Positions 1,597-56,933 of a stretch of DNA of 64,000 nt are shown here, piece by piece. The position numbers and the translations under genes were made by a program. The stretch spans positions 394,730-458,729 of IMG/VR virus record IMGVR_UViG_3300028920_000022. One strand, written 5' to 3'. Positions within the stretch are counted from its first letter, which is position 1; each line of letters opens with the position of its first letter. The notes beneath the pieces were generated by a model. It made no database searches. It saw nothing but the letters and a program-made list of their open reading frames with translations, and was not told the origin of the DNA.

Positions 1597-1682
1597 TGCG
1601 GGAATGTAGCAAAGGCGGCTAGCCAGTCTCATAAGCTGGCGTCCATTGATCGCGAAGGGTTCGATTCCCTCTCCCGCAACCA
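1597..1682 (+). tRNA. tRNA-Met(CAT) with enlarged variable region and encoded CCA
   Basis: TGCGGGA/TCCCGCA acceptor, CCAGT-CTCATAA-GCTGG anticodon arm, GGTTCGATTCC T-arm, ACCA end. Confidence 0.85.
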
Positions 1683-45247: not shown

Positions 45248-45828
45248 TTTTTGAATAATTCCATGGCATGTTCATTACAGGCTTCCCAAAACTCCTTAGA
45301 CACACAACAACTTTTTTCAATACCATTGATACAAAGTTTGATTTCAAGTTCTCCGGTAGAATCTAACTCTTTTCCTATACCAAAACCTATTTCGCTAGCA
45401 TCGTCACAAAACTGATCCGCCAATCTGTTTGCCCAAGATTCTATACTTTCGTCGTTTTGTTCAGCACATTTTCGTATAACTTCTCCGGCAAGCTTTTCCA
45501 TTTCTGTGGAAACCGGAGCTGTTATATCAAAGTTTTTAATATACTCTTCTAACTCGGTTAGTTTTTGCTCGATTTGAAGTTGTTCCCAATATTCAGCTGG
45601 CGCCGGTTTTCTGTCATAAAAGTCTAAACCCTTTTTTTCGTCATCGTCCATACACATTTGTATAGCTTCACCAAGGGCTTTTACTGATTGCTGAATCCCT
45701 TTTCCTTGGGAAACTATGTCAGTAGTTAGGCAGTGTCCTACCCAAGTGTCAGGAATATCTTCGCTGGGTGTGAAAACACAAACCAAAGACGGTTTGCTGC
45801 GTACGATCGGGCGCTTTTTCATTGTCAA
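45244..45828 (-). CDS. HicB-like N-terminal domain protein
   Basis: WVGHCLTTDIVSQG..I..S...L.EAI..C pattern. Confidence 0.55.
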   Translation of the reverse strand: MTMKKRPIVRSKPSLVCVFTPSEDIPDTWVGHCLTTDIVSQGKGIQQSVKALGEAIQMCMDDDEKKGLDFYDRKPAPAEYWEQLQIEQKLTELEEYIKNFDITAPVSTEMEKLAGEVIRKCAEQNDESIESWANRLADQFCDDASEIGFGIGKELDSTGELEIKLCINGIEKSCCVSKEFWEACNEHAMELFKK

Positions 45829-46421
45829 ATTTTTGTTTGTTCTTTGTAGTTTATGCTACATTTTTCTTGTGTTAAAATCTGATTAAATTCGCTGTTAAGA
45901 GCATTTTCCACAAGATCCAAGTCTTTTCTAGGAAAATACACAGAGATATTTAGCTCATATTGTATTGGCCAAGTTATGTTGCCAGAACCATCTAAGATAA
46001 TGTCTGGATAACCGCTAAAATGCCAAGCGCCAAATGGATTGTTTAAGCTGGCGTATTTTTGTACTATGGTTAGGAACTTGTCTATCGAGGTTTTGTCAAA
46101 TTCAACCCATACCATGTTTACTGGCACCATATTATGGTGTTGGCAACTATTCAAAGTTTTGATTCCCAATTTCCAACACAGCAAAATTATATTTGCAATT
46201 TCTTTATCTATTTCGGCTGACATTTTGTCGTATTGAACGAGAACTGTTTTGTGTGGTTTAAGTTTTTGAGCCCTAATTTTCGTTTGTTCTACCCGCTCCA
46301 TCCACACTTTTCCACGTAAATCTGGAGGATCGCGTTTGATAATGATTTTGGTACCATCGCTCAAATAAATACATGTTGGCGATTGACGAGTAATGTATGC
46401 CTTAGGATTTTGTTTGCTCAT
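45825..46421 (-). CDS. Hypothetical protein
   Basis: IDKEIA.II...WKLGI.T..SCQ phage motif. Confidence 0.6.
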   Translation of the reverse strand: MSKQNPKAYITRQSPTCIYLSDGTKIIIKRDPPDLRGKVWMERVEQTKIRAQKLKPHKTVLVQYDKMSAEIDKEIANIILLCWKLGIKTLNSCQHHNMVPVNMVWVEFDKTSIDKFLTIVQKYASLNNPFGAWHFSGYPDIILDGSGNITWPIQYELNISVYFPRKDLDLVENALNSEFNQILTQEKCSINYKEQTKI

Positions 46422-46433
46422 TTTTTTTGTTTG

Positions 46434-46510
46434 TCGGGACGGCTGGAGTTGAACCAGCGTGCAACCAACTACTCTTTCAACCGCTTATCAGGCGGAGGAG
46501 ATACGTCCCG
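46434..46510 (-). tRNA. Atypical tRNA-Ile(GAT) lacking a D-arm
   Basis: CGGGACG/CGTCCCG acceptor, CCGC-CTGATAA-GCGG, GCTGG-TTCAACT-CCAGC; 8 nt replace the D-arm; 22-nt variable region. Confidence 0.75.
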
Positions 46511-46512
46511 CT

Positions 46513-46734
46513 TTATTTCACTTTTTTCAAACTCAATTCAAACTCAGCAGTTGTAGGCTGCCAAGCATCACGGGTAGTCTTGTCCCATACCAATATCCGA
46601 ATAACACCAGGAATAGTAGGATCAAGCCTGTGACTTTCTAAACCTATTGAATACCCTTGCCAATTGATACCATCTCCTAAATAATCTATTGCGGCTCGCA
46701 CAAAAGATTCTACTGAATCGTCTATTTTAGACAT
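46513..46734 (-). CDS. Small hypothetical protein
   Basis: ORF between coaC and the tRNA. Confidence 0.5.
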   Translation of the reverse strand: MSKIDDSVESFVRAAIDYLGDGINWQGYSIGLESHRLDPTIPGVIRILVWDKTTRDAWQPTTAEFELSLKKVK

Positions 46735-47378
46735 GCCTTAACCATTTCTGCTATATCTTTTACACCAGCCATAGCACCCATACCAACTGTTCCGCAAGCT
46801 AGTTTCTTAGATACAGGATATACTATGGTAAAATTATGTCTACGTACTTCGTTGTAGTTATATGCTTTATCGTAGTGTCGGTAGAAATGCCTTTCCCAAA
46901 GCACATTTAACTGTTCGGTTGTAATCGGATGCTCCCACATGTCTGTGTTCATAGCGGGAGCTACAATAATAGGTTTCGTAATAGGATAAGCTCTATAAAT
47001 ACAAGTTAATAGGTTGTCACATATTCCGTTTGCCATTTTTGCCAGCGTATTTGCTGTTAATGGCGCAATAACAAATACATTCGCCCAATCTTTTAACTCA
47101 ATGTGTAAAACTGGATCCCCTATATCCATCCATAACCATTCTTGTTCGTCAGTTAGAATATCAATACCGCCTCCCCAAAAAGTAAGCTTCTTACCTTGTG
47201 ATATCGGCAGGTTATCGATCAGCTGGCAACGAGTATCTTGGTCTCTGATTTGTTCAACAATATTAAGAGCAGACTTGGTAGCAACAACTTTAACGTCACC
47301 AAGCTTACTGAGTTCCGAATGCAGCTCTATTGTTTTTATTGCAGCAACTGATCCGGTTATTCCAAGTAGAATGTTCAT
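46722..47378 (-). CDS. coaC: Phosphopantothenoylcysteine decarboxylase (HFCD flavoprotein)
   Basis: ILLGITGSVAA, PVLHIEL..WA..FVIAPLTANTLAKMANGICDNLLT, APAMNTDMWEHP, K.LACG..GMGAMA. Confidence 0.88.
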   Translation of the reverse strand: MNILLGITGSVAAIKTIELHSELSKLGDVKVVATKSALNIVEQIRDQDTRCQLIDNLPISQGKKLTFWGGGIDILTDEQEWLWMDIGDPVLHIELKDWANVFVIAPLTANTLAKMANGICDNLLTCIYRAYPITKPIIVAPAMNTDMWEHPITTEQLNVLWERHFYRHYDKAYNYNEVRRHNFTIVYPVSKKLACGTVGMGAMAGVKDIAEMVKACLK

Positions 47379-47647: not shown

Positions 47648-47877
47648 GTTATCACCTCTTTGATAGCACATTCACTACAAGACATTATTTCATTAACTTT
47701 TTTGATTTCTATGTTATTATACACTCCATAATTTGTTTTGTAGGTTATCGTTTGAGATGCATGGGTCGGCTCATTTTTGTCCAACAAATTAAACGCCTCT
47801 GTGCCACAGCATTCGCATATCCATTTGTAGACATGGGCATATAAACGTTCTTTTCTAATCCACACGTGGTCTTGCAT
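47644..47877 (-). CDS. Small Cys protein, IKDIIE-like end
   Basis: WICECC; ends SCSECAIKEVIT. Confidence 0.6.
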   Translation of the reverse strand: MQDHVWIRKERLYAHVYKWICECCGTEAFNLLDKNEPTHASQTITYKTNYGVYNNIEIKKVNEIMSCSECAIKEVIT

Positions 47878-48551
47878 TAGTATGTCTCCAACAGATCAAT
47901 TAGTCGTTTATACAGGTTTTTTCTGTCCACCTCGTAACAATAATTGCCGGTTATTACATAGGCTCTTTCCCGTGACCATTCTAAACAGTTGGCAATCATA
48001 ATGTTAGCATTCGAGGCTTCTCGGCTCTTTTTAGCTATCTCTATTAATTCCTCATCTTTCATTCCAACTTGTAACTTAAATTTTACCAATATTCCCTTGA
48101 AACCCCAAGGGTCACGAATCTTATCTATTATTTTTTCTGTTGGTTTTAGTTTTAAAAACAAATCTGAATGGTTGGATTTAATTTTGGCGCTATTATCCAC
48201 AGATTTCATTGAAAAAGTACGATCTCCATATCTATAAGTCTCTTCTCCAACCAACACTTCGGATACTTGATAATCGCTTATTGCCGCAGAATGAATTATT
48301 ACATCATATTTCTTTTTAGTAATTTCTTTTTCCATAGCAGAATATAATTCGTCGTATGTTTTGAATGCTATAAATTTTACGTCAGGATCTGTTTCAGATT
48401 GCATTGGGGAGTTGTTTAACAGAGTTACTTTATGTTTTTTGATCGCTTCGTTTGCTATATTAACAGCTGTTCTGCCGCGAAATATGTTGGTTATCCCACG
48501 AACCTTATCTATAGGCACAAGGGTGCTTCCGCCGGTAATTAAAATTTTCAT
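47877..48551 (-). CDS. coaB: Phosphopantothenate-cysteine ligase
   Basis: ILITGG.T..PIDKVR.ITN...G, IHSAAISDY, L.LKPTEKII, LVKFKL, .N..IAN. Confidence 0.85.
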   Translation of the reverse strand: MKILITGGSTLVPIDKVRGITNIFRGRTAVNIANEAIKKHKVTLLNNSPMQSETDPDVKFIAFKTYDELYSAMEKEITKKKYDVIIHSAAISDYQVSEVLVGEETYRYGDRTFSMKSVDNSAKIKSNHSDLFLKLKPTEKIIDKIRDPWGFKGILVKFKLQVGMKDEELIEIAKKSREASNANIMIANCLEWSRERAYVITGNYCYEVDRKNLYKRLIDLLETY

Positions 48552-48653
48552 GTGGCTCTCAGTTCTAATTTGTTCCAAGTTTCAGTTTGACAAGGAGCCT
48601 TGGTGGTGTGTAAAATAGAAAATCTATATCCCCAATCTATTTTAATAATACAA

Positions 48654-56833: not shown

Positions 56834-56860
56834 AACGATAAATGGACAAAAATTAGTAGG

Positions 56861-56933
56861 CGGGTCCTGCGAGATTTGAACTCGCGTCTAAAAGCTTTAA
56901 AGGCTTTCGCTCTCGCCGCTGAGCTAAGGACCC
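56861..56933 (-). tRNA. Ochre suppressor tRNA (anticodon TTA), Lys-like body
   Basis: GGGTCCT/AGGACCC acceptor, GCTC/GAGC D-stem, AAAGC-CTTTAAA-GCTTT anticodon arm, GCGAG-TTCAAAT-CTCGC T-arm, G73. Confidence 0.92.

What the first reader, a model, noticed from the sequence alone, without database searches (positions are those of the whole stretch)
46434..46510. tRNA-Ile(GAT) with no D-arm and a D-loop-like GG displaced into the variable region
Acceptor, anticodon and T arms are intact, but only TATCTCCT links the acceptor to the anticodon arm. The 22-nt variable region (TTGAAAGAGTAGTTGGTTGCAC) holds GAGTA, which can pair with TA(T)CTC, and a TAGTTGGT D-loop-like string. This suggests a rearranged L-shape rather than decay, perhaps evading anticodon or D-arm nucleases, or acting as a mimic.
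Basis: partly seen in the sequence, partly recalled or inferred. Interest (0 to 1): 0.65.

Follow-up and report, generated by a model that had tools for sequence, protein, structure and literature searches.

The report
Phage tRNA with a rewired core
The odd 77-base stretch is a real phage isoleucine tRNA gene from a large family that standard gene finders mostly miss; in this family the D-arm is built from two separated segments, which shows that a tRNA core can be wired in a second way.

Summary
Window 46434-46510 (minus strand) has a 7-bp acceptor stem, a T arm and an anticodon arm with loop CUGAUAA, but no D hairpin.

It is not decay. Pattern scans found more than 240 distinct relatives in viral contigs, and more in cultured Streptomyces, Microbacterium, Rhodococcus and Bacteroides phages. 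Most sit inside tRNA gene arrays. ARAGORN found 3 of 241.

Covariation supports four helices. One is a 3-bp helix between nt 11-13 and nt 37-39, paired in 100% of cells with all three pairs compensatory. It encloses the anticodon arm.

After that helix comes a D-loop equivalent, U-A-R-N-N-G-G-N. Its R covaries with the base before the T stem, like the 15-48 Levitt pair. The base after GG is A in 69 of 69 arginine-anticodon members, matching A20, the main ArgRS determinant. It is U in 170 of 171 isoleucine members.

Only Ile, Arg, Val and CAU anticodons occur, all read by class Ia synthetases.

Best reading: a working elongator tRNA-Ile(GAU) whose D-stem strands and D-loop are reconnected around the anticodon arm while the L-shape contacts are kept. 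Expression, charging and any nuclease-evasion benefit are untested. I found no paper describing this family.

The parts
46434..46510 (-). Whole gene: rewired-core tRNA-Ile(GAU), 77 nt. Nucleotide p of the RNA is window coordinate 46511-p.
   Evidence: Rfam tRNA 31.3 bits at exactly these coordinates. Family model R1 scores 88.3 bits, against 31 bits or less for the canonical tRNAs of the genome.
46504..46510 (-). Acceptor stem, 5' strand (nt 1-7)
   Evidence: All 7 pairs with nt 70-76 are compensatory across the family; 97-98% of cells are paired.
46501..46503 (-). U8 A9 U10. U8 and A9 are invariant in every member, where these positions were left free, and U10 is nearly so (157 of 159). U8 is the proposed partner of A41, like U8-A14.
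   Evidence: Invariant columns in A1 and A2. These positions were left free in the and patterns.
46498..46500 (-). 5' strand of helix P2 (nt 11-13, CUC), the D-stem equivalent
   Evidence: Pairs with nt 37-39 in 100% of cells. Pair 11-39: CG 138, AU 17, UA 4. Pair 12-38: UA 90, CG 59, GC 6. Pair 13-37: CG 151, GC 8. RNAalifold predicts this helix on its own.
46481..46495 (-). Anticodon arm: 4-bp stem (nt 16-19 with 27-30), loop CUGAUAA (nt 20-26), anticodon GAU at 46487-46489. It is flanked by a conserved U15-U31 mismatch.
   Evidence: Three of the four stem pairs are compensatory and C16-G30 is invariant. Loop features U33 and A37 are kept in all members.
46475..46480 (-). Connector U31-N32-G-A-A-A36. 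GAAA is kept in every member found by patterns that left it free. Its role is unknown.
   Evidence: The pattern did not constrain this region, yet every true member had GAAA. A few divergent Arg members carry other connectors.
46472..46474 (-). 3' strand of helix P2 (nt 37-39, GAG)
   Evidence: Same covariation as for nt 11-13.
46462..46471 (-). U40, then the D-loop equivalent A41 R42 N43 N44 G45 G46 N47 N48 R49. This has the same spacing as canonical A14 R15 N16 N17 G18 G19 N20 ... A21.
   Evidence: A41, G45 and G46 are invariant. Nt 47 is A in 69 of 69 Arg members and U in 170 of 171 Ile members. A20 is the main ArgRS determinant (PMC9976931).
46459..46461 (-). C50 A51 (invariant) and Y52. 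Y52 forms a lone covarying pair with R42, equivalent to the 15-48 Levitt pair.
   Evidence: Pair 42-52: AU 120, GC 28, other 11 of 159. It ranks 16th of all column pairs by mutual information, among the helix pairs. Paired in 93-96% of cells.
46442..46458 (-). T arm: 5-bp stem (nt 53-57 with 65-69), loop UUCAACU
   Evidence: Four of five pairs are compensatory. G57-C65 and U58 U59 C60 A62 are invariant.
46434..46441 (-). Acceptor stem 3' strand (nt 70-76) and discriminator A77. CCA is not encoded.
   Evidence: The discriminator is A in 171 of 171 Ile members, and G, A or U in Arg members.

Best explanation
The element is a working phage gene for an elongator tRNA-Ile(GAU). It belongs to a large, phage-restricted family of tRNAs with a rewired core.

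The acceptor stem, T arm and anticodon loop are canonical. There is no D hairpin. Instead, the three bases after U8-A9-U10 (nt 11-13) pair with three bases downstream of the anticodon arm (nt 37-39). The resulting D-stem-like helix encloses the anticodon stem and, by inference, stacks on it.

The chain leaving that helix then forms a D-loop equivalent (A14-like A41, R15-like R42, G18 G19-like G45 G46, position-20-like nt 47). It ends in a Y that pairs with R42 like the 15-48 Levitt pair, just before the T stem.

In space this amounts to moving the segment 'D-stem strand plus D-loop' from the 5' side to the 3' side of the anticodon arm. The elbow contact (GG with the T loop) and the core layers could then still form an L shape.

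I infer that the host IleRS charges it through the anticodon and A73, that EF-Tu and the ribosome accept it, and that it reads AUU and AUC.

Shown here: the sequence anatomy, the family, the four helices and the lone pair by covariation, the isotype-linked base at nt 47, and the genomic setting in tRNA arrays.

Inferred: the three-dimensional fold, expression, processing, charging and use in translation.

Unknown: why phages keep this form.
For: - Anatomy and Rfam alignment.
Members also occur in cultured phages of Bacteroides, Streptomyces, Microbacterium and Rhodococcus.
- Structure: the 17 highest mutual-information column pairs among 159 sequences are exactly the four helices plus pair 42-52. 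98.0-98.7% of cells are paired against 61-63% in shuffles and 34-46% in slid controls. Covariation score is 0.90-0.98 against 0.21-0.23, with 0 of 500 shuffles as high. RNAalifold finds the same helices unaided.
- D-loop equivalence and charging identity: nt 47 is A in 69 of 69 Arg members and U in 170 of 171 Ile members. The discriminator is A in all Ile members and G, A or U in Arg members. These follow the published rules (PMC9976931).
- tRNA setting: 148 of 241 copies lie within 200 nt of another tRNA gene.
- In this genome it is the only tRNA with anticodon GAU and the only family member. ATT is the genome's fourth commonest codon.
- The genome encodes no class Ia synthetase of family PF00133, so charging would fall to the host enzyme.
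Against: - There is no expression, end-mapping or aminoacylation evidence. No RNA run was listed for this phage.
- The 3-D fold is inferred from sequence logic only.
- U8, A9, U40, A41 and GAAA never vary among the core members, so their roles cannot be tested by covariation.
- In the spatial model the helix reads R11-Y24, which from my own knowledge is unusual for bacterial elongator tRNAs.
- The single-sequence minimum-energy fold differs in the middle of the molecule, although its extra pairs fail on the alignment.
- Some phages carry a canonical tRNA-Ile(GAU) as well (Mildred21), so the rewired form is not simply filling a gap.
Confidence: 0.8

Rival explanations
1. It is a functional tRNA as above, and the rewired core is kept because it escapes host or phage enzymes that recognise the canonical D-arm or variable-loop face, such as tRNA-cleaving defence nucleases, toxins or quality control. 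It addresses the selective advantage and does not exclude the best explanation.
For: - The family is essentially confined to phages. The same pattern gave more than 119 viral contigs but only 12 hits among 185,579 species genomes, all on MAG contigs.
- One carrier, Mildred21, also encodes an RNA ligase, a polynucleotide kinase and a CCA-adding enzyme, the last right next to its rewired Ile gene. From my own knowledge these are classic tRNA-repair functions.
- G000 has a CCA-adding-like gene.
Against: - No nuclease that reads the D-arm of tRNA-Ile or tRNA-Arg was identified here.
- The anticodon loops are fully canonical, so anticodon nucleases would not be evaded.
- The co-occurrence with repair genes is an anecdote from one phage, not a statistic.
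Confidence: 0.25
2. It is a tRNA-like decoy, primer or regulator that is not used in translation. For example, it could soak up a tRNA-binding toxin or mimic tRNA-Ile for a sensor.
For: - The shape is unusual and standard finders miss it.
- There is no direct evidence of charging.
Against: - A decoy would not need the base after GG and the discriminator to switch together with the anticodon (A47 with Arg anticodons, U47 plus A73 with Ile).
- The acceptor and T stems keep the 7/5 geometry. From my own knowledge, that geometry is what EF-Tu and RNase P read.
- The anticodon loop keeps U33 and A37.
- Members sit in tRNA arrays as if they were ordinary isoacceptors.
Confidence: 0.08
3. It is a decaying tRNA pseudogene or a tRNA fragment left by recombination.
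For: - The D arm is missing.
- The Rfam score is only just above threshold.
Against: - Hundreds of diverged copies keep every helix through compensatory changes, plus 20 or more invariant single-stranded bases.
- It exactly fills a 91-nt gap between two genes on the same strand.
Confidence: 0.01

Closest known systems
Canonical bacterial and phage elongator tRNA (Rfam RF00005)
   Same: 7-bp acceptor stem, 5-bp T stem with GUUCRA loop, 7-nt anticodon loop with U33 and A37, and an isotype-appropriate discriminator. The equivalents of U8, A14, R15, G18, G19 and Y48 are all present. Genes lie in tRNA arrays.
   Different: There is no D hairpin. The two strands of the D-stem-like helix are separated by the whole anticodon arm. 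The D-loop equivalent lies 3' of the anticodon arm, where the variable loop should be. The anticodon stem has 4 bp plus a U-U mismatch. An invariant GAAA connector has no canonical counterpart.
D-armless mitochondrial tRNAs (metazoan mt-tRNA-Ser(AGY), nematode armless tRNAs; PMC7609411, PMC4013460)
   Same: These are tRNAs without a D hairpin that still work in translation. A connector replaces the D arm.
   Different: The mitochondrial forms have lost the D-loop and its GG contact with the T loop. They are flexible or boomerang-shaped, and they co-evolved with specialised mitochondrial factors (PMC7609411). Here the D-loop elements are kept and relocated, a short D-stem-like helix persists, and the setting is the ordinary bacterial translation system.
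allo-tRNAs and (8/4), (9/3) tRNAs of bacteria and phages (Mukai et al. 2017, PMC5389517)
   Same: Non-canonical tRNA architectures found by mining metagenomes, some in phage tRNA clusters.
   Different: In those the acceptor and T stem lengths change, and a D arm and a long variable arm are kept. Here the acceptor and T stems are the canonical 7/5 and the core is rewired.
Circularly permuted tRNA genes of the red alga Cyanidioschyzon merolae (from my own knowledge, not checked here)
   Same: The order of tRNA segments in the gene departs from the canonical order.
   Different: There the permutation is at gene level and is undone by processing, giving a canonical mature tRNA. Here nothing suggests such processing. 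The covariation fits a mature RNA that itself has the altered connectivity.

Membership tests
tRNA (Rfam RF00005, canonical cloverleaf) | Score at or above the family's gathering threshold | tested here: inconclusive
   It scores 31.3 bits against a threshold of 29 in the sensitive local scan. The whole-window scan at gathering threshold did not report it, and ARAGORN did not either.
tRNA (Rfam RF00005, canonical cloverleaf) | 7-bp acceptor stem, 5-bp T stem with UUCRA loop, and a discriminator | tested here: met
   Covariation supports both stems.
tRNA (Rfam RF00005, canonical cloverleaf) | Anticodon stem-loop with a 7-nt loop, U33 and a purine at 37 | tested here: met
   The loop is CUGAUAA. 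The stem has 4 bp plus a U-U mismatch rather than 5 bp.
tRNA (Rfam RF00005, canonical cloverleaf) | D arm as a hairpin between nt 9 and nt 26 | tested here: not met
   The Rfam alignment deletes 15 D-arm positions. Only 8 nt separate the acceptor and anticodon stems.
tRNA (Rfam RF00005, canonical cloverleaf) | Aminoacylation and use on the ribosome | not testable with these tools
   No RNA run was listed. The indirect support is the isotype-specific identity bases.
Rewired-core phage tRNA family (defined here, model R1) | 3-bp helix between nt 11-13 and 37-39 enclosing the anticodon arm | tested here: met
   The window has CUC paired with GAG. Across the family the helix is 100% paired with 3 of 3 pairs compensatory.
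Rewired-core phage tRNA family (defined here, model R1) | U-A-R-N-N-G-G-N string after the helix, with its R paired to the base before the T stem | tested here: met
   The window has UAGUUGGU, with G42 and C52.
Rewired-core phage tRNA family (defined here, model R1) | High score with the family covariance model, well separated from canonical tRNAs | tested here: met
   It scores 88.3 bits. The next best hit in the genome scores 31.2 bits and is a canonical long-arm tRNA-Tyr. The window sequence was one of the 94 sequences used to build the model, so its own score is partly circular. Members not used for building still scored 60-90 bits.
D-armless mitochondrial-type tRNA | Loss of the D-loop and T-loop elbow contact, with a simple connector replacing the D arm | tested here: not met
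   G45 G46 and the canonical T loop are invariant, and a D-loop equivalent is retained.

The most novel reading that the evidence does not exclude
These RNAs are an undescribed structural class of translationally active tRNA. The D-stem strand plus D-loop have been transposed to the 3' side of the anticodon arm, and the L shape is preserved. The class is compatible only with class Ia synthetases (Ile, Val, Arg, Met/Ile2). Phages maintain it because the altered core face makes these tRNAs invisible to host enzymes that read the canonical D-arm and variable-loop side.
Probability: 0.3. Interest if true: 0.95.

Novelty: new variant of a known kind. Interest (0 to 1): 0.85.

Why it matters
- **tRNA structure.** As far as I know, outside mitochondria every known translating tRNA keeps a D hairpin. 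A widespread family that works with ordinary bacterial ribosomes, EF-Tu and synthetases while wiring the core differently would show that the L shape can be reached by a second connectivity. It would also be a natural experiment on which core contacts matter: Levitt pair, position 20, GG with the T loop.
- **Genome annotation.** ARAGORN found 3 of 241 copies. Curated GenBank records leave these genes blank, call them tRNA-OTHER, or give the wrong isotype. Phage tRNA inventories and codon-supply analyses are therefore undercounting Ile and Arg tRNAs.
- **Testability.** Members occur in cultured phages with laboratory hosts, so charging, structure and fitness tests can be done directly.
- **Synthetase compatibility.** The restriction to isotypes read by class Ia synthetases suggests a testable rule about how the synthetase classes approach the tRNA core.

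Tried and rejected
- **Megablast against GenBank phages.** A 2-kb stretch around the element gave no match. Only the more sensitive blastn mode found the first relative.
- **RNA sequencing runs.** None was listed for the phage, so read laying was not used and expression is untested.
- **Miscounted pattern.** One viral scan was wasted on a pattern with one N too many and returned nothing.
- **Single-sequence fold.** The minimum-energy fold proposes pairs 12-13 with 33-34 and 39-41 with 48-50. On the alignment these break in 14-67 of 94 sequences and show no compensatory change, so I rejected them.
- **Hammerhead-like core.** CUGAUAA followed by GAAA recalls a hammerhead, but from my own knowledge the essential G of CUGAUGA is missing. 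CUGAUAA is also the normal tRNA-Ile(GAU) loop.
- **Stop-codon recoding.** The window holds a tRNA with anticodon UUA, but ORFs of 120 aa or more already cover 80-84% of the DNA under the standard code. I saw no evidence for recoding.
- **Phage-encoded IleRS.** No class Ia synthetase domain (PF00133) was found in the genome.
- **Neighbouring genes.** The flanking ORFs have no tRNA-related domain.
- **Other isotypes.** Scans with the anticodon left free and a structure-only scanner over 4.66 Mb of fetched loci found only Ile, Arg, Val and CAU anticodons.
- **Literature.** Six full-text searches and five papers read gave no description of this family. That library lacks most subscription journals, so this is not proof of novelty.

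Full report
**1. The observation.**
On the minus strand, window 46434-46510 reads as follows:
- a 7-bp acceptor stem, CGGGACG with CGUCCCG;
- the linker UAUCUCCU;
- an anticodon stem of four pairs, CCGC with GCGG, flanked by a U-U mismatch;
- the loop CUGAUAA, anticodon GAU;
- 21 nt, UGAAAGAGUAGUUGGUUGCAC;
- a T arm, GCUGG-UUCAACU-CCAGC;
- discriminator A.

Rfam's tRNA model aligns exactly these coordinates at 31.3 bits against a gathering score of 29. It deletes 15 D-arm positions and inserts 18 nt in the variable region. ARAGORN did not report the element. The whole-window Rfam scan at gathering threshold did not report it either. The element fills a 91-nt gap between two ORFs on the same strand, 46513-46734 and 45825-46421. 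The window is the last 64 kb of a 458,729-bp IMG/VR virus record with 39.5% G+C.

**2. It belongs to a large family.**
Sensitive blastn found an 83% identical stretch in the crAss-like Bacteroides phage Kehishuvirus tikkala. It lies in an unannotated 90-nt gap inside that phage's tRNA array.

I then ran pattern scans of IMG/VR, each leaving a different part of the molecule unconstrained:
- variable-region motif fixed, everything else free;
- 5' linker and loop fixed, variable region free;
- loops only fixed, both linkers free;
- anticodon loop free.

Together they gave more than 240 distinct sequences of the same 77-nt design. Source contigs range from about 4 kb to over 400 kb and come from gut, marine, freshwater and soil samples.

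The same pattern that saturated the viral scan gave only 12 true members among 185,579 species genomes. All 12 are on MAG contigs and none is in an isolate genome. The family is therefore essentially a phage feature.

**3. Secondary structure.**
I took 159 distinct sequences of identical length and computed mutual information with average-product correction over all column pairs. The 17 top pairs are exactly these:
- acceptor stem, nt 1-7 with 70-76;
- anticodon stem, nt 17-19 with 27-29 (C16-G30 never varies);
- T stem, nt 53-56 with 66-69 (G57-C65 never varies);
- a 3-bp helix, nt 11-13 with 37-39;
- one lone pair, nt 42 with 52.

The 3-bp helix, which I call P2, was seen under a pattern that constrained neither strand. 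Its triplet combinations are:

| 5' strand / 3' strand | Count |
|---|---|
| CUC/GAG | 93 |
| CCC/GGG | 36 |
| ACC/GGU | 14 |
| CGG/CCG | 5 |
| UCC/GGA | 3 |
| CCG/CGG | 2 |
| AAC/GUU, CAC/GUG, AGG/CCU | 1 each |

On an alignment of 84 members less than 88% identical to each other (A1), 98.0% of cells form pairs. Shuffled controls give 63.4% and slid controls 37-46%. The covariation score is 0.90 against 0.21, with 0 of 500 shuffles as high. P2 is 100% paired and all three pairs are compensatory. RNAalifold predicts the same four helices unaided. A second alignment that includes Arg, Val and CAU members gives the same result: 98.7% paired, score 0.98.

The minimum-energy fold of the window sequence alone differs in the middle of the molecule. 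Its extra pairs fail on the alignment.

**4. The D-loop has moved, not vanished.**
Directly after the 3' strand of P2 comes U40, then A41-R42-N-N-G45-G46-N47-N48-R49, then C50-A51-Y52, then the T stem. The spacing A-R-N-N-G-G-N matches canonical A14-R15-N16-N17-G18-G19-N20. Two independent observations support this equivalence.
- R42 and Y52 covary: AU 120, GC 28, other 11 of 159. Y52 is the base just before the T stem, which is where canonical Y48 pairs with R15 in the Levitt pair.
- Nt 47 tracks the amino-acid identity. It is A in 69 of 69 members with arginine anticodons and U in 170 of 171 with isoleucine anticodons. A20 is the principal determinant for bacterial ArgRS. The same identity table lists U20 (in the text, D20) among the E. 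coli isoleucine determinants (PMC9976931).

The discriminator also follows the isotype. It is A in all 171 Ile members and G, A or U in Arg members, as in the published identity sets. A structure kept only as a decoy would have no reason to obey these rules.

**5. Isotypes.**
With every anticodon allowed, the structurally validated members have these anticodons:

| Isotype | Anticodons and counts |
|---|---|
| Ile | UAU 124, GAU 47 |
| Arg | ACG 39, CCU 15, UCU 11, CCG 2, UCG 1, GCG 1 |
| Val | UAC 2 |
| Met or Ile2 | CAU 3 |

A scanner that uses only the geometry and base-pairing, with no sequence invariants apart from the minimal U8, U33, A-R...GG and UUCRA anchors, found 225 hits in 4.66 Mb of fetched loci. 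It found the same four groups and nothing else.

All four are read by class Ia synthetases. Single-step anticodon neighbours read by class II enzymes (Thr, Lys, Asn, Ser, Phe) are absent. This is a firm observation within the limits of my patterns. The explanation, that only class Ia enzymes tolerate this core face, is inference.

**6. Setting and annotation.**
- Of 241 copies in 223 loci, 148 lie within 200 nt of another tRNA gene. ARAGORN detects 3.
- Some contigs carry tandem pairs or a GAU plus UAU pair.
- Members occur in cultured phages: about 40 Streptomyces phages, several Microbacterium phages, Rhodococcus phage Trina and Kehishuvirus.
- The family covariance model R1 scores members at 60-90 bits and canonical tRNAs at 31 bits or less.
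- In Streptomyces phage Mildred21 (NC_042008.1), 73703-73779 is an unannotated Ile(GAU) next to the phage's CCA-adding enzyme gene. 94857-94933 is an unannotated Arg(ACG). 91367-91442 is annotated tRNA-Phe(gaa) but reads as Arg(UCG) in the family register. 86379-86453 is annotated tRNA-OTHER and is a divergent Arg(UCU).
- Trina's tRNA-OTHER at 104372-104450 is an Arg(ACG) member with a longer connector.

**7. This phage.**
- The genome has 16 ARAGORN tRNAs, including a canonical Ile(UAU). It has no canonical Ile(GAU).
- The element is its only family member, at 88.3 bits.
- ATT is the fourth commonest codon of its long ORFs at 37.6 per thousand, and ATC adds 8.5 per thousand.
- The genome encodes no class Ia synthetase domain.
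- It encodes one CCA-adding-like enzyme. That is relevant because CCA is not encoded in the gene.

**8. How it most likely works.**
*Shown.* The RNA has canonical acceptor, T and anticodon-loop features. It has a 3-bp helix that encloses the anticodon arm, and a relocated D-loop with a Levitt-type pair and an isotype-linked position 20.

*Inferred.*
- P2 stacks on the anticodon stem, as the D stem does.
- Its 5' strand (nt 10-13) runs straight into the anticodon stem. It therefore occupies the place of canonical 22-25, with C14 as 26.
- Its 3' strand (nt 37-40) runs up into A41, and so occupies the place of canonical 10-13.
- U8 pairs with A41, like U8-A14. G45 G46 reach the T loop. C50 A51 Y52 stand in for 46-48.

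Relative to a normal tRNA, the segment 10-21 has been moved from before the anticodon arm to after it. The invariant GAAA connector has no counterpart, and its role is unknown. It might fill the helix groove that nt 9, 45 and 46 normally occupy.

Two caveats apply. First, in linear order UCUC...GAGU resembles, as I recall it, the GCUC...GAGC D stem of ordinary tRNA-Ile, which may hint at the origin. Second, in the spatial reading the helix is R11-Y24, which is atypical. Charging by host IleRS, processing, CCA addition and decoding of AUU and AUC are all inferred.

**9. Rivals.**
- Decay is excluded by the covariation.
- A non-translating decoy is unlikely because of the identity rules in section 4.
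- Nuclease evasion as the selective advantage remains possible but has no direct evidence. The only hint is that one carrier phage also encodes RNA ligase, polynucleotide kinase and a CCA-adding enzyme.

**10. Comparison with what is known.**
- D-armless mitochondrial tRNAs have lost the D-loop and become flexible (PMC7609411). Here the D-loop is kept.
- allo-tRNAs and the 8/4 and 9/3 tRNAs change the acceptor and T stems and keep a D arm (PMC5389517).
- A 2020 review of non-canonical tRNAs mentions no phage D-armless tRNA.
- Further searches found nothing. The library omits most subscription journals, so novelty is probable rather than certain.

**11. Limits.**
- All family members were found by patterns, so members with other invariants are undercounted. 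Divergent connectors do exist.
- No expression data could be obtained.
- No RNA 3-D modelling tool was available.

Noticed in passing
window 56859-56933 (-): A well-formed tRNA with anticodon UUA, which would read the stop codon UAA (ARAGORN; Rfam 71.5 bits). Under the standard code, ORFs of 120 aa or more already cover 80% of the genome and 84% of the window, so I saw no sign of genome-wide recoding. Its role is open.
   Followed up: partly
window 1597-1682 (+): An 86-nt tRNA with anticodon CAU, an apparent long variable arm and an encoded CCA. ARAGORN reported it but Rfam at gathering threshold did not. It may be another non-canonical tRNA.
   Followed up: no
window 46722-47378 (-) and 47877-48578 (-): Just upstream of the tRNA lie phage genes with the Flavoprotein domain (PF02441, 6.7e-34) and the DFP domain (PF04127, 4.8e-26). 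Together these are the two halves of coenzyme A biosynthesis protein CoaBC, here as separate genes.
   Followed up: no
L485 (NC_042008.1, Streptomyces phage Mildred21) record 91367-91442, 86379-86453, 73703-73779, 94857-94933: Annotation problems in a curated GenBank phage. The gene annotated tRNA-Phe(gaa) reads as a rewired Arg(UCG). A tRNA-OTHER is a divergent rewired Arg(UCU). Two rewired genes, Ile(GAU) and Arg(ACG), are not annotated at all.
   Followed up: yes
L465 (NC_042040.1, Rhodococcus phage Trina) record 104372-104450: The feature annotated tRNA-OTHER is a rewired Arg(ACG) with a longer connector (CGUCAAAA instead of NGAAA). It overlaps the annotated start of a thioredoxin CDS.
   Followed up: partly
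L020, L027, L226, L227 (tandem pairs); L003, L007, L009 and other crAss-like contigs: Some large phage contigs carry two rewired Ile(GAU) genes head to tail, 87-88 nt apart start to start (about 10 nt between genes). Many contigs of about 95 kb, the size of crAss-like phage genomes, carry a rewired Ile(GAU) and a rewired Ile(UAU) 253 nt apart.
   Followed up: partly
G000:C1:225591-225980 (outside the window): The phage encodes a CCA-adding / poly(A) polymerase family protein (PF01743, 7.9e-16). In Mildred21 the equivalent gene lies directly next to the rewired tRNA-Ile.
   Followed up: no
family alignment A2, nt 15 and 31: All members have a 4-bp anticodon stem topped by a conserved U-U mismatch at the 27-43 equivalent. 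A 2026 paper proposes that 4-bp anticodon stems loosen decoding in bacteria (PMC13092985). Whether that applies here is unknown.
   Followed up: no
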